Shown here: one piece after another, positions 2,754 to 62,090 of the stretch
Position numbering within the stretch: the stretch's first letter is position 1
Layout: each line of letters opens with the position of its first letter
Assembly: GCF_006345805.1 (NCBI RefSeq)
Contig: NC_043010.1
Coordinates: forward strand, 744,001 to 808,000
From: Octopus sinensis
Taxonomy: Eukaryota
Reading direction: 5' to 3'
Length of the DNA: 64,000 nucleotides
Made by a program: the position numbers and the translations under genes
Notes under the pieces: generated by a model
What the model was told of the DNA's origin: nothing
Database searches by the model: none
What the model saw: only the letters and a program-made list of their open reading frames with translations

Positions 2754-3680
2754 ACACATACATACATACATACATACATACATTCACACGCACTTAAGCA
2801 CGCACGCACACGCACACGCACGCAAGCACGCAGGGACATGCACACGTACGCATTCGCACACAGTTGCACACACACACACACACACTCGCGTACATCATTC
2901 ACACACTCCCGATATCACTAACGCATACTGCAATACACACACCTCGATATATATATATATATATATATATAAGACATACGAATGCATACACATCCGCAAA
3001 AGCACATTCACACAAAGAAACCCACATCGAGAAAGTTTCACGCAACGAGAACTACACACACATACACACATGCACACACACACATGCACACACACACATG
3101 CACACACACACATGCACACACACACTCACACACTCACACACACACGCACGCACACTCTCTCTCAGATTCATACAAACACACACAAGAAAATGCACACGCT
3201 CACATTTTCACCTATTCATACACACACGCAAACACACTCACATACACACATACACACACACTCAGATTCAAACACATACACACGTACATGCACTCTAATT
3301 CATACACTCATAGCAAAGACACGCGGACGCACACAGGCACACACACAAACATAGACACGCATACATACACAGTCACACACACATACACAGACACACTCAT
3401 ACATAAGCACAAACACGCACTCACTCAGACACACGTACACAAACTCACATACAAGCACAGTCACCCACACAAACAAAGAATTGTCTTCGAGTGTTTGCTG
3501 TTGCTATGGTTAAGAGCAAGGATAACAAGGATGGATTCCTTTGATTTAAATGAGGAGGCAGTGAGGGTGGGGATGTGAAGGGCGTGATCCGGCTTCAGAG
3601 CAGAGGTTGCAGGAGCAGTGGCACTATAGAGAAGAGATAGATAGATAGATGATAGATAGATAGATAGATAGATAGGTAGG

Positions 3681-3767
<87 letters not shown>

Positions 3768-3768
3768 T

Positions 3769-3837
<69 letters not shown>

Positions 3838-3916
3838 GGATGGATGGATGGATGGATAGATAGATTGAAAGATGGGTAGACAGATAAAAAAGAAAAAAAA
3901 CAGACAGATAAACAGA

Positions 3917-3947
<31 letters not shown>

Positions 3948-4923
3948 GCAAACAGATTGCTAGATAGATAGTTGGATGGATGGATTGAGAGAAATCTCCA
4001 TGGATGGATAGATTGCTTAAAAAAGATAAACATATCGACACATAGACGGAAGGACCGACCGATAAAAAAAAAAGGAAAGAAAGTGAGAGGGGTTGAGGGA
4101 GAGGAAGGGGCCATGTAAATCATGCCTGGATGCGACATTATAATTTGAATTTAAATTTTAATTTAAATAACTGGAAATGAAGGCAAGAAAGTAAATTAAT
4201 AAAAACACAAACAGCAAAACAAACACCGCTAAATATAAAAAAAAATCAAATAAATAAAGTAATAAACAAAGATTGAAGCGAGACAAGAAGAAAAAACAGC
4301 AAAAACGAAAATGGCGAAAAGAAAACTGAAGGCGATGGAATGGTCTGTTAGGAGGAAGGAAGTAGGAGGTGATTGTTGGGTTCTTACTCTAACGATCAGA
4401 GTAAGAGAGTAAGAGTGGCGGTGTCAGGGGAGGTTGGCGGTAGGTAGGGTGGAAGCTGGTTTTATTTTCTTCTGGTGATGTTAACGAGGTTTATCTTTCC
4501 AAAATGGTGGCGGTAAAACTAAATTTATACCTTTTCCATGGAGGTGGCAAACAATGATTTTCTTTCTCTTTTTTTTTTCTTTCTAGTTTAGTGCTGTTGT
4601 ATTGTTGTTCTTGTTGTTGTAGTAGTGATGGTGGTACAGTGAAATGAAATTTACCTTTTCATGGAGGGTGAAATGAAATTTATTGTTTCATAAAGGTAAT
4701 GAAGATAGAAAAAATATATTTAGATATTTACCATGGTTGAATGGTTAAGAAGGTCGCTTTGTAACCACGTAAGTTCTGGTTCGATCCCACTGCACGACAC
4801 CTTGGGCAAATACTTTCTATTCTAATCCCTAGTCGACCATTGCCTTGTGAGGTAATTTGCAAGAGGGGAATTTGAGTTCAAGCCTGTCACACACAAACAT
4901 ATATACACGTACATACATACATG

Positions 4924-5530: not shown

Positions 5531-5643
<113 letters not shown>

Positions 5644-6200
5644 GTGTGTGTGTGCGTGTGTGTGTGTGTAAGCCAAGTTGGCGGAATCGTTAGCAGGCAG
5701 GGTAAATGCTTTGTGGCATTTCGCTCGTCTCTACTTTCCGGGTTCGAATACCGCCGAGATCAACTTTGCCTTTCATCTGTTTTTGGGTGTCGATGAAATA
5801 AATATCAGTCAAGTCCTGGGGGCGATATAATCGATTATCCCTCTCCCCAAAATAGTAGAAAAAATATATATGTATTGTGGCCTCTCCTATCGAAAATGAC
5901 ATATAAGCATTCAACTTTTGCCGAGCGACTTACACAAATGGTTTGTTTATAGTGATCAAATGTATATGCTCTACATTAGCTCAGTCTTTCCATCAAATCG
6001 ACATCACCTGAACAGGTGCACGGTGTGCCACCCGTCAAGTGTCGAAGTGATCGCAGGGCAACGTGAGATGAAGTGTTTTGCTCAAGAACACAACGCACCA
6101 CCCGGTCTAGGAATTGAAATCACAATCACTAGATCGCGAATGCAACCCTCTAACCACAAGGCTATGCGTCAAGTGGATATGTGAGTCTGTAGGCGCGTGT

Positions 6201-9611: not shown

Positions 9612-10295
9612 TACACGCACGTTTGTATCTACACATATATGCATACATATTTACATATATACATACATATGAGTATGCATGTATATGTATGTATATGTAT
9701 TATAATATATGTATATATTATATATACATAATATATATATATATATATATATTACCATACATTATATATAATATATATATATATTACATATGTATGCATA
9801 TGTATGTATGTATATATGTATATATATATGTATGTATGTATATATAATATATTATATTATTATATATATATGTATAATATATATATATACATACATATGT
9901 ATATGTATATGCCAAACACAAGCAACTCCTGTGGCTAGGCCAGTTACATTTGCCCTGCTTGTTGTAAGTAGGTAGCAACACACGCCAATACCACCTTATC
10001 CTGAAGATGAAACTAGAAAGGTCTCACGGTTAAGACACTTGCATAAAGACTGTAGGCAATTGGCTCACGTATGTAGCTTTATAGTTACCATATATATGTG
10101 TATAATATATATACATACATACATACACACACACACATATATATATATATATGGCCTGCTCGCTTAGCCAGCGGGGTGGCGTCATTTAAAGGCTAAAAAA
10201 ACAATGCGAAGCGCATTGTGACCAGCGATGTGTAGCAACATCTGATAGCCTGATCGGGCACGGTGATATATATATATGTATATATATATGTGTGT

Positions 10296-10920
10296 GTGTA
10301 TGTATGAATGTATGTATGTATGTATGTATGTATGTATGCATGTATGTATGTATGTATTATGTATGTATGTATGTATGTATGTATGTATGTATGTATGTAT
10401 GTATGCATGTATGCATGTATGTATGTATGTATTATGTATGTATGTATGTATGTATGCATGCATGTATGTATGTATTATGTATGTATGTATGTATGTATGT
10501 ATGTATGTATGTACGTATGTATGTATGCATGCATGTATGTATGTATGTATGTATGTATGTATGTATGTATGTATGTACGTATGTATGTATGTATGCATGT
10601 ATGTGTGTATGTATGAATGTATGTATGTATGTATGTATGTATGTATGCATGTATGTATGTATGTATGTATGTATGTATGTATGTATGTATGTATGTATGC
10701 ATGCATGTATGTATGTATGTATGTATGTATGTATTATGTATGTATGTATGTATGTATGCATGCATGTATGTATGTATTATGTATGTATGTATGTATGTAT
10801 GTATGTATGTATGCATGTATGTATGTATGTATGTATGTATGTATGTATGTATGTATGTATGTATGCATGCATGTATATTGTATGTATGTATGTATGTATG
10901 TATGTATGTATGCATGCATG

Positions 10921-10951
<31 letters not shown>

Positions 10952-11318
10952 GTATGTATGTATGTATGCATGTATGTATGTATGTATGTATGTATGTATG
11001 TATGTATGCATGCATGTATGTATGTATGTATGTATGTATGTATGTATGTATGTATTATGTATGTATGTATGTATGTATGCATGCATGTATGTATGTATTA
11101 TGTATGTATGTATGTATGTATGTACGTATGTATGTATGCATGCATGTATGTATGTATGTATGTATGTATGTATGTATGTATGTATGTATGTACGTATGTA
11201 CGTATGTATGTATGTATGTATGTATGTATGTATGCATGCATGCATGTATGTATGTTTGTATGTATGTATGTATGTATGTATGTATGTATGTATGTATGTA
11301 TGTATGTATGTATGTATA
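10296..11318. repeat. About 1-kb (ATGT)n tetranucleotide array
   Basis: Directly visible. It abuts the 3' end of the RTE fragment and is the source of the many MYVC/HTYI pseudo-ORFs. Confidence 0.98.
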
Positions 11319-17305: not shown

Positions 17306-17606
17306 GATTGTTTCTTCTCAAGCCACTCCTGGCTCATAGGGCCGGTTTCCCTGTTTCCTTGGCGTATAGGTTCCCCACCTGGTCGGGACGACGGTCCGTC
17401 GCAGGTGAGCTGCAAGATGCAGGAAGAAAGAGTTAGAGAAAGTTGTGGCGAAAGAGTCAGCAGAAGTTCGCCATTTCCTTCTGCCGGATCCGCGTGGAGC
17501 TTAGGTGTTTCGCTCATAAACACACACATCGACCGGTCTGAGATTCGGACCCGCGATCCCTCGACCACAAGTCCGCTGCTCTAACCACTAGGCCATGTGC
17601 CTCCAC
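17306..17606 (-). mobile_element. tRNA-derived SINE, family C (local label), with 13-bp target-site duplication
   Basis: Head GGAGGCACATGGCCTAGTGGTTAG on the minus strand. AGTGGTTTTGTTT is duplicated at 17293-17305 and 17607-17619. Confidence 0.88.
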
Positions 17607-18859: not shown

Positions 18860-19220
18860 GAGCGAACGGTCTTCGTCCCAGAGCTCACAAGATGGGAGAA
18901 GTTCGAAATGTGGTCCTTTGCTATTCGTAAGACCCGCAGAAGAGAAAGCAGGTCAACCTCCGACACCGAGAGCACCGACGGATGAATGCGCATCCATGCT
19001 CAGCGGTTGCGTAGGAAGTCGGGGACAAGAAACAGGAAGAAAGAGGGAGAGAAAGTTGGAGTGAAAGAGTACAAGAGGGGTCGGCACCACCCCCTGCCGA
19101 AGCCTCGTGGAGCTTTAGGTGTTTTCGCTCAATAAACATACACAACGCCTGGTCTGGGAATCGAAACCGAGATCCTCCGACCGCGAGTCCTTTCCCTAAC
19201 CATTGAACATTGCGCCTCCA
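18860..19220 (-). mobile_element. SINE family C
   Basis: Matches the copies at 17306, 39165, 51835 and 61776. Confidence 0.85.
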
Positions 19221-19399
19221 CTTGATGATGATGATGATGATGATGACGACGTTGATGATGGTGGTGATGATAGTGGTGGTGACGATGATGTTGATGACGA
19301 CTATGATGACAATGAAGGTAGTGATGACGACGATGATAATAATGCTGGTGGTCTTTTGTCCTTCGTTTTACTTTTCGTTGTCTTAATATATTTTTCCCT

Positions 19400-19443
19400 T
19401 TCTTCCAATACACTGATTCTCAATATTTCTCATTTACTTACAG
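19400..19443 (+). promoter_or_regulatory. Splice acceptor of the large protocadherin exon
   Basis: Long pyrimidine tract ending CATTTACTTACAG|ATG at 19443/19444. This implies an upstream non-coding exon, which I could not locate. Confidence 0.6.
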
Positions 19444-19495
19444 ATGTACACAGGATTGTGACATGACATGCCTCCCATAACATGCAGTTAGACAC

Positions 19496-22153
19496 ATGCG
19501 ACACGGGACGGTCGTTCAACACGTCAATTCTATGATGAAGCCAAATGTGTGCGGAACATTCTTACGACATGTCGTAGCTATGATGAGACCCGACAAATGC
19601 GAAACTATTGCGTTATCTGCTTTTGTTATGATCTGTCCTGACGTGTGTAGGATCATAGTAAGTCATAGTGTTTTTATGACCTGGATAGAAGCGTGGAGGA
19701 CGCTTGCTCGACATATCATAGCTGGGATGCAGACTAACAGGATGTTATTTAAAATTTCTCTAATGCTGTATGTTATTCAAAGCTGCGCATGTGTGGACCT
19801 AGTCTACGTAGTTGAAGAAAACCAAATTCCAGGAACATATCTTGGAAATATTGCTGAAGATTCACACATTCTGAAGAAGTTATCTGTAAAAGACAGGAGC
19901 CAGGTTCGATTCAGTTTATTACAAGAAGCAAGTGAAAATTTATCATTGTTTAATGTAACGGAGTTTAGTGGAAAACTCTATACGACCAGGGTATTAGATG
20001 CTGAAGTTTTATGCGAACCGAATATAGAATGTTTCTTAATGCTCAACATAGCAATGAAGCGAGGTCAATTATATATGGAAATATTGAAGGTCAAACTTGT
20101 TGTACTGGATATCAATGATTGCAGGCCTGAGTTCATTGTCAAAGAGATAAACATTAGCTTCTCTGAAGGAGATCGAAAAGGGACTCGTAAATCCATCCCC
20201 AGTGCAATCGACAGAGATATTAGTGCGCTAAACTCCAAGATTACCTATCATTTACGTAACGCTACTGACAAACCTTTCTCTCTCTCCATGGTAAATATTC
20301 AGAATGGAACAGATGAGATATACATAACTGTTAAAGAAAAACTTGACAGGGAAACAATAGACACATATCATCTTGAGGTGGTCGCTGAAGATGGTGGCCG
20401 ACCCCCAATTCTTTCGTATCTTCAGGTTCAAATTACAGTTACCGATGAAAATGATAATACTCCTATTTTTCTCCCAGATGCTTATAATGTCTCAATCAAT
20501 AGAGTTGTATTTCCTGGAGAATTAATTGTCAAACTATCAGCTTCTGATACCGACATAGGTAAAAATGGTCAGATTTCATATTATTTCACATCGCAGACTT
20601 CCACTAGAACGAAATATTACTTCACTTTAAACAAAACAACTGGCATCATTTACCTAAGAAAGAAGTTGGTACCAAATAAAAGCATAGATTTTAAGTTATT
20701 CGTCAAAGCAGTGGACAGTGGTCAGCCTCACCTTAGTGCCTTTGCTGATGTGTTAGTTAATGTTGTAAACACAGAGAACCACGCGCCCCAAATATTGGTT
20801 AACTTGGGTTCTTCATCATCTAACACAGCAGTTATTTCAGAATCGATCAAAGTAGGGAGTTTCATTGGTTATGTTGAAGTGAAAGACAACGACAGCGGTT
20901 CCAACGGAGAAGTAATCTGTACACTTCGTAATCAGAGATTTTACCTTCATAACCTCGGTGAGAAAAAATACAAAATAAAAGTTAAAAATCCAATCGACCG
21001 CGAATCCAAGGCCAGCCATAACATCACAATAGCTTGCAAGGACAAAGGTATGCCTCCTTTGTGGGTGAAGAGCAAGTTTTATATTCGAGTTATTGACGTA
21101 AACGATGTACCTCCAAGATTTTCCCAAAAATCTTTTAAATTTTGGACCTATGAGAACCAGGACAGAAACTTTCCAGTTGGTTTTGTTAATGCTTCAGATC
21201 CAGACATGGGAGCCGGGGGTGAACTCTCTTACTCGTTGATGAATCTGAATGGAACTTTCTCGCCTTTTCAGATCACTAATTACGGGTACATTTCTACAAG
21301 AGTGCCACTGGATCGTGAACAGCAAGAAATCTATCATCTGCGTGTTTTCGTCAAGGACCACGGGGTACTTTCGCTAAACAATACAGTTAGTGTCACTGTC
21401 GAAGTAATGGATGAAAACGACAATGTGCCCTGTTTTACCTTCCCAGATGTTAACCCCTTTCTTATGAATGTTAATTATCATCCACAGAATGGTAGAAACA
21501 TCACAATTCTCAGAGCCATTGACAAAGACATCGGGAAGAACGCCTTCTTAACATATGAAATAACTGAAGGAAATACACGAAAACTATTCATACTAAATCA
21601 TAAAAATGGTCAATTATCTTTTAATCGAGTTCCTTTCGAAAAGGATGCTGGGATACATAACCTACAGATTCGAGTCAGAGACAGTGGAATTCCTGTGTTA
21701 CATGCAGTGACAAACCTATCATTAATATTATCAATTGGCAACGCCGCATCCAAAACATTAACAGCGGTGCAAATCGGTACAACTGTCAGGATTCATAAAA
21801 ATCTGTTTATCGTCATAATCTTGGTGGTTATGATTGCTTCGGTTTGTGTAGTGGTGTTGATCACAACATGTCTGATACGCAGAAATGACCGTGGGAGAAA
21901 TTCACGCGTTGACAAAGCAACTGCGAGAAACAGACGTCGAGAAGGAAAATGCTTCAAATGCTTGCCTATGACAGCTGTATCACAAATCGACATAACTCTG
22001 CCTGAGGTGACCAACAACCGCAATACATGGAGTGTACAACTTACTGAATCTTGTGTTGATCTCGACACCGAAAACGAAACAGACAACAACGACTGTGATT
22101 CACATCCATTACATGTCCAGGCATCAGTTCCAGCAATGCAAGACGTAAGTTGA
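19496..22153 (+). CDS. Pcdh: Protocadherin, large exon: signal peptide (ATG 19742), 6 cadherin repeats, transmembrane helix, proximal cytoplasmic tail. Probably spliced after 22144.
   Basis: 885-codon ORF. Signal-like MLFKISLMLYVIQSCAC; EC1 has C-X5-C (CEPNIEC); linkers DINDCRPEF, DENDNTPIF, NTENHAPQI, DVNDVPPRF, DENDNVPCF; LDRE/IDRE motifs; TM LFIVIILVVMIASVCVVVLITTCLI (21803-21877). The symbol is family-level only. Confidence 0.96.
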   Translation: MRHGTVVQHVNSMMKPNVCGTFLRHVVAMMRPDKCETIALSAFVMICPDVCRIIVSHSVFMTWIEAWRTLARHIIAGMQTNRMLFKISLMLYVIQSCACVDLVYVVEENQIPGTYLGNIAEDSHILKKLSVKDRSQVRFSLLQEASENLSLFNVTEFSGKLYTTRVLDAEVLCEPNIECFLMLNIAMKRGQLYMEILKVKLVVLDINDCRPEFIVKEINISFSEGDRKGTRKSIPSAIDRDISALNSKITYHLRNATDKPFSLSMVNIQNGTDEIYITVKEKLDRETIDTYHLEVVAEDGGRPPILSYLQVQITVTDENDNTPIFLPDAYNVSINRVVFPGELIVKLSASDTDIGKNGQISYYFTSQTSTRTKYYFTLNKTTGIIYLRKKLVPNKSIDFKLFVKAVDSGQPHLSAFADVLVNVVNTENHAPQILVNLGSSSSNTAVISESIKVGSFIGYVEVKDNDSGSNGEVICTLRNQRFYLHNLGEKKYKIKVKNPIDRESKASHNITIACKDKGMPPLWVKSKFYIRVIDVNDVPPRFSQKSFKFWTYENQDRNFPVGFVNASDPDMGAGGELSYSLMNLNGTFSPFQITNYGYISTRVPLDREQQEIYHLRVFVKDHGVLSLNNTVSVTVEVMDENDNVPCFTFPDVNPFLMNVNYHPQNGRNITILRAIDKDIGKNAFLTYEITEGNTRKLFILNHKNGQLSFNRVPFEKDAGIHNLQIRVRDSGIPVLHAVTNLSLILSIGNAASKTLTAVQIGTTVRIHKNLFIVIILVVMIASVCVVVLITTCLIRRNDRGRNSRVDKATARNRRREGKCFKCLPMTAVSQIDITLPEVTNNRNTWSVQLTESCVDLDTENETDNNDCDSHPLHVQASVPAMQDVS
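22145..22150 (+). promoter_or_regulatory. Phase-0 splice donor
   Basis: CAA GAC|GTAAGT lies three codons before the ORF stop and is a perfect intronic donor consensus. Confidence 0.8.
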
Positions 22154-35162: not shown

Positions 35163-35709
35163 TGTCAGGTCACTTTCGAGTGCTACTGGTAACGTGTAAC
35201 CCAGTAGAACCTGTTGCATGGTCGGGTCGTCGGTGACTAAGCCGGCAACCCCACCAAGCTTGCTTGGTGAGGAGGGTGTTTATTGGACACCCTGCGGGAT
35301 GAAAAATAAAACCCGTCAAAGGGCAGAGGAACTCTTGAGAGTCAACGGCCATCCAATAAATGTCTTAAGGCTGTATCATGCGCGGGAACATAGAAATAAT
35401 CGGACTGAATACTCGATCGCGCGGTTAAACCATTGGGAGTGAAGGACTCCTAGCCTTTGTTAGGGCATCCTTCTAGGAGAAGGTAACTCAGGTAACTGGA
35501 ATAACTTCGACATAAAACCTGCGGCTCGGTGGTTACCGATGATGTTGACTTGTTCTTCTTTTCGGATTATGACTGCTGTTGCTTAGTGAGTGGGATCGAC
35601 TCAGTGCACAGCCTTTCCTCACTTAAAAAAAAATCTTCTTGCACAGGCATTGCACGATAACAACATTGATTAAGCTTCGTGCAATGGCCATACTCGATAA
35701 CGAGGGGGC
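35163..35709 (+). mobile_element. Non-coding RTE-derived element (structured 5'UTR)
   Basis: Contains GGGCATCCTTCTAGGAGAAGGTAACTC, resembling RTE 5'UTRs, and several hairpins. It is flanked by the direct repeat AGCCACCATG (35139-35148 and 35710-35719). Confidence 0.55.
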
Positions 35710-35715
35710 AGCCAC

Positions 35716-36279
35716 CATGTATGTATGTATGTATGTATGTATGTATGTATGTATGTGTGTATGTATGTATGTATGTATGTATGTATGTATGTATGCATGT
35801 ATGTATGTATGTATGTATGTATGCATGTATGTATGTATGTATGTATGCATGCATGTATGTATGTATGTATGTATGTATGTATGTATGTATATATGTATGT
35901 ATGTATGAATGTATGTATGTATGTATGTATGTATGTATGTATGTATGTATGTATGAATGTATGTATGTATGTATGTATGTATATATGTATGTATGTATGA
36001 ATGTATGTATGTATGCATGTATGTATGTATGTATGTATGCATGTATGTATGTATGTATGTATGTATGTATGTATGTATATATGTATGTATGTATGAATGT
36101 ATGTATGTATGTATGTATGTATGTATGAATGTATGTATGTATGTATGTATGTATGAATGTATGTATGTATGTATGTATGTGTGTATGTATGTATGTATGT
36201 ATGTATGTATATATGTATGTATGTATGAATGTATGTATGTATGTATGTATGTATGTATGTATGTATGTATGAATGTATG

Positions 36280-36310
<31 letters not shown>

Positions 36311-36465
36311 TGTATGTATGTATGTATGTATGTATGTATGAATGTATGTATGTATGTATTATGTATGTATGTATGTATGTATGTATGAATGTATGTATGT
36401 ATGTATGTATGTATGTATGTATGTATGTATGTATGTATGAATGTATGAATGTATGTATGCATGCA
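35716..36465. repeat. About 750-bp (ATGT)n array
   Basis: Directly visible. Confidence 0.98.
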
Positions 36466-39164: not shown

Positions 39165-39480
39165 TATATCACCGTGATCACTGTGACCGACCAGACTATC
39201 AGATGTTGCTACACATCGCTGGACACAATGCGCTTCGCACTGTTTTAGACAAAAAATGACGCCACCCCGCTGGCCAAGCGAGCAGGCCAACAGAAGAAAG
39301 AGTGAGAGAAAGTTGTGGTGAAAGAGTACAGCAGGGATCGCCACCCCACCCCGTGCCGGAGCTTCGTGGAGCTTTAGGTGTTTTCACTCAATAAACACTC
39401 ACAACGCCCGGTCTGGGAATCGAAACCGCGATCCTACAATCGCGAATACGCTGCCCGAACCACTGGGCCATTGCGCCCCC
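39165..39480 (-). mobile_element. SINE family C
   Basis: Reverse complement of the 51835-52153 copy. Confidence 0.88.
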
Positions 39481-42180: not shown

Positions 42181-42777
42181 TATAATGTATTCGTATAAAT
42201 CCTTAAATCCTTAAAAATGTTTTAGCCCGAAGGCCGCGGCTATGCTGGGGCACCACCGCTGGTATGTATGGTAAATATATCTTTATATGTACATGTATAT
42301 ATGTTTGTATATGTGTTTGTGTGTGTGCGTGTATGTGAGTGTATATATATATATATATATAGATATATATATATATATACACACGCATATATGTATGTAT
42401 GTTTAAATATGTATATATGTATGTGTGTAAATATTAAAGAAAGAGAGAACGAGAGAATGTATGAGTGCTTGTGTGATAGAAAGGAAGAGAAGGAAAGAGA
42501 GAGAGAGAGAGAGAGAGAAAGAAAGAAAGAGAAAGAGAGAGAAAGAGAGAGAAAGGAAGAGAATCGACATTAAATGGTTCGAAGAATGGCGTAAAAGAGA
42601 GCAGGAGAGATAAGGAAACTATTATTTTGTTGGCTCTTTTGAGGTAAACAGCGTCAGTTTGTGGCTGTCGTAATCTGGTTGCTCGCTTCTACTGATTAGA
42701 GTTAACTTTAAACCGGATTAGGTTGTTATGCTCTCTTTTGCTATTGCTGTTATAACTGCTTTAATACCTCACTGAAG

Positions 42778-42873
<96 letters not shown>

Positions 42874-42951
42874 TTCCTAAATATAACATATATATATATG
42901 TATATATATATATATGTGTGTGTGTATGTACATATGCATATATATACACAC

Positions 42952-42974
<23 letters not shown>

Positions 42975-42982
<8 letters not shown>

Positions 42983-44945
42983 AATATAAAAATATTTATA
43001 TATATGGATATATGTAGGTATATGTTTATGTATAGCTATGAATATATATGTGTATACATACGTGTGTGTGCTTGCGCGTGTGTGAAGCATGTATATGTAC
43101 ACTCGCATGCATGCATGCATACATACATACATACATACATACACACACACATACATACATACACACACATACATACATACATACACACACATACATACAT
43201 ACATACACACACACATACGTACATACATACATACATACATACATACATACATACGTACATACATACATACATACATACATACATACGTACATACATACAT
43301 ACATACATACATACATACGTACATACATACATACGTACATACATACATACATACATACATACATACATACATAACCCATGCATACGTGTCAGCATGCCAA
43401 CTTGTGTACCGACATGCATGCATACATTCGTACATACATACATACATACGTACATACATACATACATACATACATACACATACACACATACACACATACA
43501 CATACATACATACATACATACATACATACATACATGCATAAATGCATACATACATACATACATACATAACCCATGCATACATTCGTACATGATATTTTTA
43601 AAGAACGTACATACTCACACAGATGCACATGTATACATAATATATCCATACATATACATAAATAAACGCAGCCAAACATTCATGCATATATGTACATATG
43701 CACATGTCTGCGCCCATGTTCATATGCACATACATACATAAATGTATACGTACATGCATACATGCGTAAATACATACATTCATTCAGGCATACATACATG
43801 CATGCAATAATACATACATACATACATAATACATACATACGTACATACATACATGCATACATACATACGTACATACATACATACATGCATACATACATAC
43901 GTACATACATACATGCATACATACATATATAAACAAAATATTCCCCGATATATATATATAATATATATGAATATAAAAATATTTATATATATGGATATAT
44001 GTAGGTATATGTTTATGTATAGCTATGAATATATATGTGTATACATACGTGTGTGTGCTTGCGCGTGTGTGAAGCATGTATGTACACTCGCATGCATGCA
44101 TGCATACATACATACATACATACATACACACACACATACATACATACACACACATACATACATACATACACACACATACATACATACATACACACACACA
44201 TACGTACATACATACATACATACATACATACATACTACGTACATACATACATACATACATACCTACATACGTACATACATACAACATACATACATACATA
44301 CGTACATACATACATACGTACATACATACATACATACATACATACATACATACATAACCCATGCATACGTGTCAGCATGCCAACTTGTGTACCGACATGC
44401 ATGCATACATTCGTACATACATACATACATACGTACATACATACATACATACATACATACACACATACACACATACACACATACACATACATACATACAT
44501 ACATACATACATACATGCATAAATGCATACATACATACATACATACATAACCCATGCATACATTCGTACATGATATTTTTAAAGAACGTACATACTCACA
44601 CAGATGCACATGTATACATAATATATCCATACATATACATAAATAAACGCAGCCAAACATTCATGCATATATGTACATATGCACATGTCTGCGCCCATGT
44701 TCATATGCACATACATACATAAATGTATACGTACATGCATACATGCGTAAATACATACATTCATTCAGGCATACATACATGCATGCAATAATACATACAT
44801 ACATACATAATACATACATACGTACATACATACATGCATACATACATACGTACATACATACATACATACATGCATACATACATACGTACATACATACATG
44901 CATACATACATATATAAACAAAAATATTCCCCGATATATATATAT
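42975..44945. repeat. Tandem duplication of an about 985-bp low-complexity unit
   Basis: Non-microsatellite anchors (GAAGCATGTAT, AGCATGCCAACTTGTGTACC, AAATAAACGCAGCCAAAC, TATTCCCCGATA) recur at an offset of 981-987 bp. Confidence 0.92.
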
Positions 44946-47356: not shown

Positions 47357-47482
47357 GGTCAGTTGCCATCCAGTATTGCGTGCACAGACAAACCAAAACC
47401 AACACCTCGCAGTCGAAGGGTTGACCTCAAATCTCCTGTAAATAATTCAATGACGCAAACAGCACAGCAGTGTCAAACTTAG
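47357..47482 (+). CDS. Pcdh: Candidate terminal coding exon of the protocadherin (41 aa cytoplasmic tail)
   Basis: Strong acceptor TTTTTACTTTCTTTGTCTTTATTTTCAG|G. Phase 0, matching the donor, gives the longest open frame: GQLPSSIACTDKPKPTPRSRRVDLKSPVNNSMTQTAQQCQT*. It is followed by about 2 kb of repeat-poor sequence. The link to the upstream exon is inferred. Confidence 0.55.
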   Translation, partial: GQLPSSIACTDKPKPTPRSRRVDLKSPVNNSMTQTAQQCQT

Positions 47483-50562: not shown

Positions 50563-51834
50563 TATACAATTACCACAGACGACTCAGAAACAGTAGAAAG
50601 CCAGACTAAGTCCTTTTTTTTTTTTTAGTATTTCTATTTTCTAGCATTTAGTTAACATCCCTTGGAAGATCGGAACTGAAATCCTGCCTGTGACAACATC
50701 AATTTCCTTGTTTTATTTCAATACCGATAAAATATCTATCAAATACTGTTCCCAATATCGATTTAGTTGAATGTATAGTTGCCCCCTCTCCACAGACACA
50801 CACGTACTAGAAACGTCTCTCTCGGTGTAAGAAATCAATAAGACGGCCATATGCTTATTGACTTCAATATTTCTACCCACCCGCTTCTCCGCCGGTTTTA
50901 TCATCTGAACGATACATGTTGGACAGGAAATGTTATTGGTTTTGGAGAAAATCCCGAGATTATTTCGAAGCTTTAGATTAGGTTTCATTGGTTGTTTTCT
51001 AAATTCTAAATTTTCTGGTGTCAGATTTTAGCGAAAAATCTACGTTAAATTTCTGTGAAGGTTTGCCAGTCATTGGTATCATCTTTTTTTTCCCCCCCTT
51101 TTTAATGCAATCTAATATCTTTTTGTATAATGGCTGCTCTGACTCAGATATGTAAGCAGTTCTTTAACATGGGATGTATTTCTGGTTAGTGTCGATGACT
51201 CTTCAGAGCTGAAGTAGATTTTAATCTTCTCAGAGGGTTCTAGTTTCTGGGATGACGTTTTGTCAATGATATAGATCAGTAGTTTTAAACTATTTTTTGC
51301 CTTTCGTTCCTTTTGATTTCCTATTTTATCTTACTGGACCTCCATTGCCAGTCAATGTTTTAAAAGAGTCCTGTTATATTTTTAATATCAAATATTATTA
51401 GGAATTGCACAACAAAACTGTAAAAATATTTTTTCTATTGTAGATGTGTAAGCAATGTATTGCACATGAATCTTAACAACAAAATCTCATATGGACCCCA
51501 CAAGGGTCATACGAACCCCAGTTGAGAACCGCTGTTATAGATGTATGGCTTCCTTGAGAATCCTTTGTGGGTTTTTGTGCCGATGACTGTTGCAAACTTC
51601 ACTTTTATCAGAATTTTCAAGGGCAAGAGAACGCTGTTGTGAGACATATGCAGACAAATATCTGAAAGATTTGTCTAATGGGAAGGAATAGTGGGAGTCA
51701 GAGATGTACTTGTATCCTTGAACTTTCTTATTGCTCTGGGCTTCATCATCGTCATCAATCCCTAGAAATTACTTGTGCCCTAGGATTCGTAGACCTGATC
51801 ATCCAGTTTCTATGGCGTATGTCACCGGGATCGT

Positions 51835-52153
51835 GGATGCGCAATGGCCCAGTGGTTAGGGCAGCGGACTCGCGGTCGTAGGATCGCGGTTTCGATTCCC
51901 AGACCGGGCGTTGTTGTGAATGTTTATTGAGTGAAAACACCTAAAGCTCCACGAGGCTCCGGCAGGGGGGGGGGGTGATCCCTGCTGAACTCTTTCACCA
52001 CAACTTTCTCTCACTCTTTCTTCTGTTGGCTTACTCGCTTAGCCAGCGGGGTGGCGTCATTGAAGGCTAAAACAATGCGAAGCGCATTGTGACCAGCGAT
52101 GTGTAGCAACATCTGATGGGCTGGTCGGTCACGTGATCACGTGATCACGTGAT
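51835..52153 (+). mobile_element. SINE family C
   Basis: Head GCGCAATGGCCCAGTGGTTAGGGCAGCGGACTCGC, B box GGTTTCGATTCCC and a (CACGTGAT)3 tail. Confidence 0.9.
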
Positions 52154-61775: not shown

Positions 61776-62090
61776 GTGGAGGTGCAATGGCCCAGTGGTT
61801 AGGGCAGCGAACTCGCGGTCGGAGAATCGCGGTTTCGATTCCCAGATCGGGTGCTGTGTGTGTTTATTGAGCGAAAACACCTAAGAGCTCCACGAAGCTC
61901 CGGCAGGGGGTGGTGGCGACCCCTGTTGTACTCTTTCGCCACAACTTTCTCTCACTCTCTCTTCCTGTTTCTTGAGTAACGCTGCAATGGACTGGCATCC
62001 CGTCCAGCTGTGGGGGGGTGGGACACATACGCTATAGAACCCAGGAAACCTGGTCCATGAAAAGGCTTGAAAAGGGCGACGTTTATCGTT
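61776..62090 (+). mobile_element. SINE family C with 14-bp target-site duplication
   Basis: TTAGTTAACCATTT is present at 61762-61775 and 62091-62104. Confidence 0.92.

What the first reader, a model, noticed from the sequence alone, without database searches (positions are those of the whole stretch)
19505..19744. Five degenerate 16-codon His/Met/Cys repeats in frame ahead of the protocadherin signal peptide
Seen: the 82-codon leader has an exact 48-bp period: GTVVQHVNSMMKPNVC / GTFLRHVVAMMRPDKC / ETIALSAFVMICPDVC / RIIVSHSVFMTWIEAW / RTLARHIIAGMQTNRM. There are no indels or stops. Units 1 and 2 share 29/48 nt and 8/16 aa, and four of the eight conserved codons differ only synonymously (G, T, H, P), which hints at protein-level constraint. 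I know of no such domain in protocadherins. Inference: either a translated N-terminal module (turning the signal peptide into an internal anchor, possibly metal or redox sensitive) or a repeated uORF/ATG regulatory array.
Basis: partly seen in the sequence, partly recalled or inferred. Interest (0 to 1): 0.7.

Follow-up and report, generated by a model that had tools for sequence, protein, structure and literature searches.

The report
Repeat-built leader on octopus protocadherin
One octopus protocadherin gene carries, in frame ahead of its normal signal peptide, five decayed 16-codon repeats that octopuses and the distant argonaut have conserved as protein, so it is probably a real, very long, lineage-specific leader peptide of unknown role.

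Summary
Window 19505-19744 holds exactly five in-phase 48-bp units: lag-48 identity is 0.50, z = 11 against shuffles. Only the frame shared with the protocadherin ORF is open.

The window is Octopus sinensis. The ORF equals RefSeq XP_036364455.1, which already annotates the leader as CDS, and no paper I found describes it.

Orthologues in O. bimaculoides, O. vulgaris, an unnamed Octopus species and Argonauta hians all keep the leader open and in frame. Randomised-substitution tests show protein-level constraint in frame 0 only: z = 3.8-4.1 against Argonauta, compared with 4.7 for true CDS and -0.2 and -1.2 for the other frames. dN/dS is 0.38-0.56.

The conserved ORF starts at Met14 (19535). 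Codons 1-13 are not conserved as coding in Argonauta.

About 115 paralogues have ordinary 17-30-residue signal peptides. The leader has no credible homologue in Pfam, PDB or 1.84 billion representative proteins.

Best reading: a translated N-terminal extension that makes an 86-99-residue signal sequence. Translation is well supported. Cleavage, topology and function are inferred. The metal/redox idea gains no support, because most His, Met and Cys are not conserved. A uORF array is disfavoured. No transcript or proteomic evidence could be obtained.

The parts
19505..19744 (+). Five in-phase, decayed 48-bp (16-codon) tandem units. Consensus GTIVRHVIAMMRPDVC.
   Evidence: lag-48 identity 0.50 (z = 11). 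The consensus matches the units at 40, 36, 29, 27 and 30 of 48. No further unit lies on either side, and there is no other copy in the 64-kb window on either strand.
19496..19534 (+). Codons 1-13 of the annotated leader (MRHGTVVQHVNSM). Open in Octopus species but not conserved as coding in Argonauta. The ATG at 19496 has a weak context (C at -3, C at +4).
   Evidence: Argonauta has a 19-nt and a 9-nt length difference here and an in-frame TGA three codons before its ATG. The randomisation test for these codons is uninformative (z = 0.7).
19535..19741 (+). Conserved translated leader, codons 14-82 (MKPNVC + units 2-5). Met14 is the first ATG with A at -3 and is the start of the Argonauta ORF.
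   Evidence: The BLOSUM62 score of the frame-0 peptide alignment against Argonauta is 155, versus 76 +/- 19 under randomised placement of the same substitutions (P = 5e-5). Only frame 0 shows the excess. Within Octopus, z = 2.5 and 2.0.
19742..19792 (+). Canonical signal-peptide core MLFKISLMLYVIQSCAC. The predicted mature N-terminus VDLVYVVEE starts at 19793.
   Evidence: Met83 and the core are conserved in all orthologues. Paralogues start here and place the same [VA]D.xYxVEE motif at residues 17-30. The cleavage site is inferred from the -3/-1 rule (C, C) and was not predicted by a tool.
19496..22144 (+). Exon 1 CDS of the protocadherin (residues 1-883 of O. sinensis XP_036364455.1), followed by a GTAAGT donor at 22145.
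   Evidence: tblastn gives 100% identity over residues 1-883. Pfam Cadherin PF00028 E = 1.6e-67 in six stretches, and Cadherin_2 PF08266.
47357..47482 (+). Exon 2 (residues 884-924, GQLPSS...QQCQT, plus stop), preceded by a ttttcag acceptor.
19433..19447 (+). Deeply conserved TTTACTT[A/G]CAG|ATGT element after a T-rich tract. It looks like a 3' splice acceptor for an upstream 5'UTR exon, or possibly a start-site element. It lies 52 nt before the annotated ATG.
   Evidence: It is identical in three Octopus species and differs at one base in Argonauta. Its function was not tested.
19471..19492 (+). Second conserved non-coding block, CCTYCCAT..CATGCAKTTWGA, between that element and the leader ATG.
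   Evidence: alignment of Octopus and Argonauta.
19223..19350 (+). (TGA/GAT)n microsatellite upstream of the T-rich tract. It is present at the same place in O. bimaculoides, the unnamed Octopus species and Argonauta.

Best explanation
The five repeats are the translated N-terminal extension of the signal sequence of one protocadherin orthogroup, annotated 'protocadherin-19-like' in O. sinensis and 'gamma-B7' in O. bimaculoides.

Shown: an ancient tandem amplification of a 48-bp coding unit predates the Octopus-Argonauta split. Each unit has since evolved on its own under purifying selection on the encoded peptide.

Inferred mechanism:
- Ribosomes start at an upstream in-frame AUG. The likeliest is Met14 at 19535, which has the first good context and is the only upstream start conserved in Argonauta. 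In Octopus, Met1 at 19496 may also be used.
- This gives a pre-protein whose signal sequence has a 69-82-residue, net-basic, probably helical n-region, followed by the ordinary h-region (ISLMLYVIQSCAC) and cleavage site (before VDLVY).
- The extension stays on the cytosolic side while the cadherin ectodomain is translocated. Signal peptidase then releases a normal mature protocadherin plus an 86-99-residue leader peptide anchored N-in in the ER membrane.
- That leader peptide, or the extension acting before cleavage on targeting or translation rate, is what selection preserves.
For: 1. The repeat is real and exactly phased with the ORF.
2. The leader is open in frame in O. sinensis, O. vulgaris, O. 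bimaculoides, three samples of a further Octopus species and Argonauta hians. There are no indels within Octopus, and the indels in Argonauta are in frame (+1 and +6 codons).
3. Leader nucleotide identity between O. sinensis and O. bimaculoides is 96.3% with no gaps. The CDS is 96.0%, while the flanks are 84-92% with gaps.
4. NG86 dN/dS for the leader is 0.38-0.56, against 0.26-0.29 for the rest of the gene. The one-sided Fisher test on rounded counts gives P = 0.023 for O. sinensis vs the Logan species, but 0.10 and 0.29 for the other two pairs.
5. Randomised-substitution test against Argonauta: z = 4.1, P = 5e-5. For ungapped units 3-5, z = 3.8 in frame 0 but -0.2 and -1.2 in frames 1 and 2. 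A true-CDS control gives 4.7, -0.7 and -0.6.
6. Substitutions fall 3rd > 1st > 2nd codon position (23, 18, 12). They include multi-base synonymous changes: AGG>CGA (Arg) and CTT>TTG (Leu).
7. Argonauta keeps the 48-nt period (P = 0.0015), and each of its units is closest to its positional counterpart in Octopus (33, 29, 29 of 48).
8. The signal-peptide core and its Met are conserved directly downstream. Paralogues have mature N-termini at residues 17-30, so the downstream segment is the family's normal signal peptide.
9. Conserved non-coding elements lie upstream of the leader, not upstream of Met83. This suggests the mRNA includes the leader.
10. N-terminally extended signal peptides made from an upstream in-frame AUG are a documented class. 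Examples are PTPRJ (PMC7725344), DCBLD2 (PMC13570295) and the 98-residue MMTV signal peptide (PMC8725593).
Against: - No transcript, ribosome-profiling or peptide evidence could be obtained. The three Logan contigs run on past the exon-1 donor and could not be assigned to RNA or DNA.
- The cleavage site and topology rest on inspection, because no signal-peptide predictor was available.
- The AlphaFold model is uninformative (mean pLDDT 36.5), so a helical n-region is only a guess.
- In O. sinensis, four short upstream ATGs (19444, 19463, 19468, 19482) lie between the putative exon start and the leader ATG and would reduce initiation there. Three of them are absent in the Logan species.
- Within-Octopus tests rest on 6-24 substitutions, and only some are individually significant.
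- 99 residues would be extreme for a cellular signal peptide.
- O. sinensis residues 37-55 are hydrophobic enough (Kyte-Doolittle 19-residue mean 1.93) to raise the possibility of a different topology, though this hydrophobicity is not conserved in Argonauta.
Confidence: 0.55

Rival explanations
1. The leader is translated, but the signal-like segment is not cleaved. It acts as a type II signal anchor, so the leader is a permanent cytosolic N-terminal domain. The protein then spans the membrane twice, with both ends in the cytosol and the cadherin repeats looped outside.
For: The same evidence for translation applies. Basic residues (R82, K86) flank the hydrophobic core on the N side, which fits an N-in orientation. 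Long N-terminal extensions can impair signal-peptidase access (general knowledge).
Against: The hydrophobic core is only about 13 residues. It keeps the family's C-x-C|[VA]D end, which in about 115 paralogues sits at the end of ordinary cleavable 17-30-residue signal peptides. An N-terminal tether would hold EC1, the adhesive domain, at the membrane, which is hard to reconcile with trans adhesion.
Confidence: 0.2
2. The extension is a translated cis-acting regulator. Its nascent peptide or its several in-frame AUGs set how much protein is made, or split the output between an extended form and a Met83-initiated form. The peptide has no role after synthesis.
For: There are nine in-frame ATGs with contexts of differing strength. 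There is a precedent in the PTPRJ extended signal peptide, whose arginine cluster attenuates translation (PMC7725344). Peptide conservation is also seen in conserved-peptide upstream ORFs (general knowledge).
Against: Only M14, M61 and M83 are invariant across Octopus and Argonauta. The other in-frame ATGs are lost in Argonauta, where Met appears at neighbouring positions instead. Conservation is spread over about 70 residues with helix-like spacing (W63, W67, L70, I75) rather than concentrated in a short arrest motif. With so many upstream AUGs, few scanning ribosomes would reach Met83 on a transcript that contains the leader.
Confidence: 0.12
3. The region is not translated. It is a 5'UTR or promoter-proximal DNA or RNA regulatory array, such as repeated factor-binding sites, that is open in frame by chance and was swept into the CDS by longest-ORF annotation.
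For: Gene predictors take the longest ORF. The region immediately upstream (19400-19495) is also conserved. Vertebrate clustered protocadherin promoters carry conserved sequence elements (general knowledge).
Against: Constraint is frame-specific. No stop has appeared in any orthologue, although randomised substitution at Argonauta's level of divergence leaves the frame open only 3.5% of the time. All indels are in frame. There is no RNA structure signal (z = 0.03) and no Rfam family.
Confidence: 0.08
4. A neutral minisatellite that happens to sit in the 5' end of the gene.
For: It has tandem structure, and the neighbourhood is rich in micro- and minisatellites.
Against: Copy number and phase are fixed across Octopus species, and units 2-5 also in Argonauta. 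Units are only 40-60% alike, with no concerted evolution: each is closest to its positional orthologue. The region is less diverged than the flanks. There are no other copies in the window.
Confidence: 0.03

Closest known systems
N-terminally extended ('long') eukaryotic signal peptides, e.g. PTPRJ/DEP1 (PMC7725344) and DCBLD2 (PMC13570295)
   Same: An upstream in-frame AUG adds a conserved extension ahead of an otherwise ordinary h-region and cleavage site on a single-pass membrane protein. The extension is conserved among orthologues.
   Different: Here the extension is 69-82 residues, far longer than those cellular examples. It is built from five 16-residue tandem repeats and has no arginine cluster or multi-leucine motif. 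Neither cleavage nor any effect on translation or targeting has been shown.
Retroviral long signal peptides with a post-targeting life, e.g. the 98-residue MMTV Rem/Env signal peptide (PMC8725593) and the HERV-K(HML-2) Env signal peptide (PMC2649029)
   Same: Similar total length, about 99 residues. The architecture is the same: a long basic N-terminal part, then a hydrophobic core, then a signal-peptidase site. This makes a released, independently functional leader peptide conceivable.
   Different: This is a cellular gene of a mollusc with no sequence similarity to those peptides. No evidence exists for release or for a second function.
Cephalopod protocadherins (expanded family; Albertin et al. 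2015 as cited in PMC6339937)
   Same: The body of the protein is a typical member: a Cadherin_2 EC1 plus PF00028 repeats, one transmembrane segment, a large first exon and a short C-terminal exon.
   Different: In the set retrieved, only this orthogroup has its mature-N-terminus motif at residue about 99. Two other models have long N-termini (77 and 135 residues) that look like unrelated ORF over-extensions. The nearest paralogues are at most 53% identical and start directly at the signal peptide.
Upstream ORFs and conserved-peptide uORFs
   Same: AUGs upstream of the canonical start, with a conserved encoded peptide.
   Different: There is no stop codon, so the peptide is fused to the main product. 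It is an N-terminal extension, not a uORF.

Membership tests
Protocadherin (cadherin superfamily) | Multiple extracellular cadherin repeats | tested here: met
   Pfam PF00028 E = 1.6e-67 in six stretches, and PF08266 Cadherin_2 at residues 104-188.
Protocadherin (cadherin superfamily) | N-terminal signal peptide and a single transmembrane segment | tested here: inconclusive
   Both are seen by eye: MLFKISLMLYVIQSCAC and LFIVIILVVMIASVCVVVLITTCLI. The former aligns with the signal peptides of paralogues. No predictor was available, and the signal peptide is not at the annotated N-terminus.
N-terminally extended (long) signal peptide | In-frame upstream AUG with no intervening stop, ahead of a canonical h-region and c-region | tested here: met
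   ATGs at 19496 and 19535 are in frame and the ORF is open from 19481. The h/c-region is conserved.
N-terminally extended (long) signal peptide | The extension is actually translated | tested here: met
   The evidence is indirect and comparative only. Frame-specific peptide conservation gives z = 3.8-4.1 against Argonauta, and dN/dS is 0.38-0.56. There is no Ribo-seq or proteomic evidence.
N-terminally extended (long) signal peptide | The leader is present in the mature mRNA | not testable with these tools
   No cephalopod transcript data were reachable. The Logan contigs L002, L004 and L005 run on past the exon-1 donor and are of unknown library type.
N-terminally extended (long) signal peptide | Cleavage by signal peptidase after the h/c-region | not testable with these tools
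   Inferred only, from C at -3 and -1 and from the family-wide C-x-C|[VA]D junction.
uORF / uAUG regulatory leader | An upstream ORF that terminates before the main ORF or overlaps it out of frame | tested here: not met
   It is in frame and continuous with the main ORF in all five species.
Met/His/Cys metal-binding repeat motifs (e.g. Ctr1-type Mets motifs) | Ligand residues conserved at the same repeat positions across orthologues | tested here: not met
   Only H25, C47, C51, M14 and M61 are invariant. The His of units 4-5 becomes K or Y, and the Met-Met of unit 2 becomes T-L in Argonauta.
Any described protein domain or repeat family | A significant profile or sequence match | tested here: not met
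   Pfam has no hit at E <= 1. PDB has nothing below E = 0.6. Against 1.84 billion representatives, the search found only its own cluster plus one repeat-inflated match in an unrelated GC-rich genome.
Neutral minisatellite | Variable copy number, high unit-to-unit identity or concerted evolution | tested here: not met
   Copy number and phase are fixed. Units are 40-60% alike, and each unit is closest to its positional orthologue.

The most novel reading that the evidence does not exclude
The 86-99-residue leader is cleaved off and survives as a distinct cytosol-facing peptide, made one-for-one with this protocadherin. Its basic, acid-free first 20-30 residues and its conserved CxxxC and W-x3-W helices would give it a second function. 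Examples are signalling to the nucleus or an organelle, binding a cytosolic partner, or gating ER entry of this one isoform. That would be a cellular counterpart of the functional retroviral long signal peptides, and a new way of coupling a neuronal recognition molecule to an intracellular signal.
Probability: 0.12. Interest if true: 0.75.

Novelty: new variant of a known kind. Interest (0 to 1): 0.45.

Why it matters
Cephalopod protocadherins are studied as an independent expansion of neuronal recognition molecules. This orthogroup would be the only one in the retrieved set whose signal sequence carries a conserved extra module. It would also be one of the longest signal sequences known for a cellular protein, and it shows a tandem repeat being turned into conserved coding sequence.

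It gives a concrete, testable case for how long signal-peptide extensions arise and what they do.

Practically, it indicates that the RefSeq start codon is probably right in including a leader. It also suggests that Met14 rather than Met1 is the conserved start.

Tried and rejected
- Structure prediction of the first 220 residues with a four-sequence alignment gave mean pLDDT 36.5, and even EC1 was unresolved. I therefore ran no fold search and draw no structural claim.
- A search for partial ORFs of the leader plus EC1 on short contigs found nothing.
- The only outside match to the leader profile is P0125, E = 3.7e-5. It comes from a 55-65% GC genome (GCA_948144175.1), where LRDVVAMMR recurs in 124/145-bp genomic repeats. 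I rejected it as a repeat-inflated chance match.
- The idea that the units are duplicated copies of the signal-peptide segment was rejected at the nucleotide level: 13-17/48 matches against a background of 11.8 +/- 3.
- An RNA-level explanation was rejected. Folding gives z = 0.03. The only Rfam matches are sub-threshold C/D-box hits caused by the TGATGA motifs.
- A dispersed repeat or transposon origin was rejected. There are no other copies in the window on either strand.
- A paper search for the SRA accessions of the Logan contigs found nothing, so that species and library type remain unknown.
- A literature search found no description of this leader.
Full report
**What is in the sequence.**
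Window 19496-22153 (+) is an 885-codon ORF. Its body is a protocadherin: Pfam Cadherin PF00028 at E = 1.6e-67 in six stretches, plus Cadherin_2. It is 100% identical to residues 1-883 of Octopus sinensis XP_036364455.1, 'protocadherin-19-like'. A GTAAGT donor follows at 22145, and the short second exon lies at 47357-47482. The window is therefore O. sinensis, and RefSeq already annotates the leader as coding.

The family's normal signal peptide begins at Met83 (19742, MLFKISLMLYVIQSCAC|VDLVYVVEE). In the cephalopod protocadherin models retrieved, the same mature-N-terminus motif sits at residues 17-30. Only this orthogroup has it at about residue 99. Two other models have long N-termini that look like unrelated ORF over-extensions.

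**The observation.**
Units 1 and 2 share 29/48 nt and 8/16 aa, with four synonymous differences.
- Lag-48 autocorrelation is 0.50. The best lag in shuffles averages 0.335 +/- 0.015, giving z = 11. Lag 96 comes second.
- There are exactly five units. The 48 nt before the array and the signal-peptide segment after it match the unit consensus at background level: 11 and 14 of 48, against 11.8 +/- 3.0.
- The window holds no other copy on either strand.
- Only the frame shared with the cadherin ORF is open, from 19481. The other five frames carry 3-10 stops each across the stretch translated.

**Relatives.**
A search restricted to residues 1-105 found only orthologues. Cluster look-up added more. 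The set is:
- O. bimaculoides XP_014772752.1 (locus L001);
- O. vulgaris CAI9732373.1;
- three Logan contigs of an unnamed Octopus species (L002, L004, L005);
- Argonauta hians GAB1604372.1 (L003), 58% identical over the protein.

All keep the leader open and in frame. Within Octopus the leader has no indel. Its identity between O. sinensis and O. bimaculoides is 96.3%, the same as the CDS (96.0%), while the flanks are 84-92% identical and gapped.

Argonauta has the same layout: a (GAT)n microsatellite, a T-rich tract, TTTACTTGCAG|ATGT, and then the leader. Its ORF begins at the Met that corresponds to octopus Met14 (19535). Upstream of that Met the two lineages differ by 19-nt and 9-nt indels, and Argonauta has an in-frame TGA. 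Octopus codons 1-13 are therefore not conserved as coding. Downstream, Argonauta differs only by in-frame insertions of one and six codons, giving an acidic run VDDDDDD in unit 2.

**Is it translated?**
NG86 dN/dS for the leader is 0.38-0.56, against 0.26-0.29 for the rest of the gene. The one-sided Fisher test on rounded counts gives P = 0.023 for the most diverged Octopus pair and is not significant for the other two pairs.

The stronger test was a randomisation. I kept the observed numbers and types of base substitutions, scattered them at random over the leader, and scored the resulting peptide alignment with BLOSUM62.
- Against Argonauta, the observed score is 155 versus 76 +/- 19 (z = 4.1, P = 5e-5). 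Only 3.5% of randomisations stay free of stops.
- For the ungapped block of units 3-5, the excess is confined to frame 0: z = 3.8, versus -0.2 and -1.2 in the other frames.
- The next 47 codons of true CDS, used as a control, give 4.7, -0.7 and -0.6.
- Within Octopus, frame 0 gives z = 2.5 and 2.0, and the other frames about 0.

Differences fall 3rd > 1st > 2nd codon position. They include AGG>CGA (Arg) and CTT>TTG (Leu). Replacements within Octopus are mostly conservative, such as V/I, R/K, D/E and S/T. I take this as good evidence that codons 14-82 are translated and under purifying selection.

Argonauta keeps the 48-nt period (P = 0.0015). Each of its units is closest to its positional counterpart in Octopus (33, 29, 29 of 48). 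The amplification is therefore older than the Octopus-Argonauta split, and the units have not been homogenised since.

**What it is not.**
- It is not a known domain. Pfam gives no hit, PDB nothing below E = 0.6, and a profile search of 1.84 billion representatives only its own cluster plus a repeat-inflated chance match in an unrelated GC-rich genome.
- It is not a structured RNA (z = 0.03), and no Rfam family reaches threshold.
- It is not a neutral minisatellite or a dispersed repeat.
- It is not a uORF, because no stop separates it from the main ORF.
- The metal/redox suggestion gains no support. Across Octopus and Argonauta the only invariant candidate ligands are H25, C47, C51, M14 and M61.
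- Invariant residues instead show helix-like spacing (W63, W67, L70, I75). The AlphaFold model is too poor to use (pLDDT 36.5).

**How it most likely works.**
Shown: there is a conserved, translated, repeat-built extension immediately ahead of an intact family-type signal peptide.

Inferred:
- Initiation is at Met14. This is the first ATG with A at -3, it has the same context in Argonauta, and it is the only conserved upstream start. In Octopus, Met1 may also be used.
- The signal sequence is then 86-99 residues, with its long net-basic n-region on the cytosolic side.
- Signal peptidase cuts before VDLVY. This yields a normal protocadherin plus a membrane-anchored leader peptide. That peptide may act on targeting or translation before cleavage, or have a role of its own afterwards.

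This is the documented class of N-terminally extended signal peptides: PTPRJ (PMC7725344), DCBLD2 (PMC13570295), and, for length and an afterlife, the 98-residue MMTV signal peptide (PMC8725593). It would be an unusually long, tandem-repeat-built cellular example.

The main rival keeps translation but makes the hydrophobic segment an uncleaved anchor. The short 13-residue core and the family-wide cleavage junction argue against that.

**Limits.**
- I could reach no transcript or proteomic data for cephalopods. Presence of the leader in mRNA is only suggested by the conserved acceptor-like element (19433-19447) and the block at 19471-19492, which lie upstream of the leader rather than of Met83.
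- Cleavage and topology are unverified.
- The comparative tests rest on four independent sequences.
- No paper found describes the leader.

**Verdict.**
- The 'translated N-terminal module' reading is supported. The metal/redox rider and the uORF alternative are not.
- The feature is a lineage-restricted (Octopoda) variant of a known kind, the extended signal peptide, and its function is unknown.
- It is of moderate interest. It would rise if the leader peptide proves to be stable or functional.

Noticed in passing
window 19433-19447 and 19471-19492; L003 about 5910-5985: Two short non-coding blocks just upstream of the leader are conserved between Octopus and Argonauta: TTTACTT[A/G]CAG|ATGT after a T-rich tract, and CCTYCCAT..CATGCAKTTWGA. 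The first looks like a 3' splice acceptor for an unannotated 5'UTR exon, or a start-site element.
   Followed up: partly
window 19223-19350; L001 about 5560-5850; L003 5600-5835: A (TGA/GAT)n microsatellite sits at the same place upstream of the gene in O. sinensis, O. bimaculoides, the Logan species and Argonauta. Argonauta also has an in-frame GAC/GAT run (VDDDDDD) inside unit 2 of the leader.
   Followed up: partly
window 19026-19222, with copies at 17413-17606 (+), 39289-39480 (+), 51833-52027 (-) and 61776-61974 (-): A dispersed SINE-like element of about 195 bp, 75-87% identical between copies, with a tRNA-like B-box motif that ARAGORN does not call as a tRNA. The copy next to the gene does not align to the O. 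bimaculoides orthologous region, so it may be a lineage-specific insertion.
   Followed up: partly
window 19444, 19463, 19468, 19482: Four short upstream ATGs (tiny ORFs of 5-17 codons) lie between the acceptor-like site and the leader ATG in O. sinensis and O. bimaculoides. Three are destroyed by substitutions in the unnamed Octopus species (L002, L004, L005).
   Followed up: no
window 10267-11317, 3635-3971, 35623-36462, 42761-44722: Kilobase-scale (TATG)n, (AGAT)n and related microsatellites produce long spurious ORFs of 200-360 'codons', such as MYVCMYVC... and HTYIHTYI.... These are not genes.
   Followed up: no
window 19573-19617 and 19232-19308: Sub-threshold Rfam C/D-box snoRNA matches: SNORD25 at 19.3 bits against a gathering score of 39, and sR2 at 21.1 against 42. 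They are caused by the TGATGA motifs of the repeat units and the microsatellite, and I judge them to be chance.
   Followed up: partly
L006 5001-9063 (GCA_948144175.1, unknown GC-rich eukaryote): A predicted 519-residue protein made of repeats, partly with a 16-residue period (EAEDQQVLRDVVAMMR). It matches unit 2 of the leader over LR[HD]VVAMMR. The genomic repeat period is 124/145 bp and GC is 55-65%, so I judge the resemblance coincidental.
   Followed up: partly
window 47357-47482: The second and last coding exon of the same gene lies 25 kb downstream. Its KPKPTPRSR[RK]VD motif is conserved in Argonauta. No other protocadherin ORF of at least 200 codons lies in the 64-kb window.
   Followed up: partly
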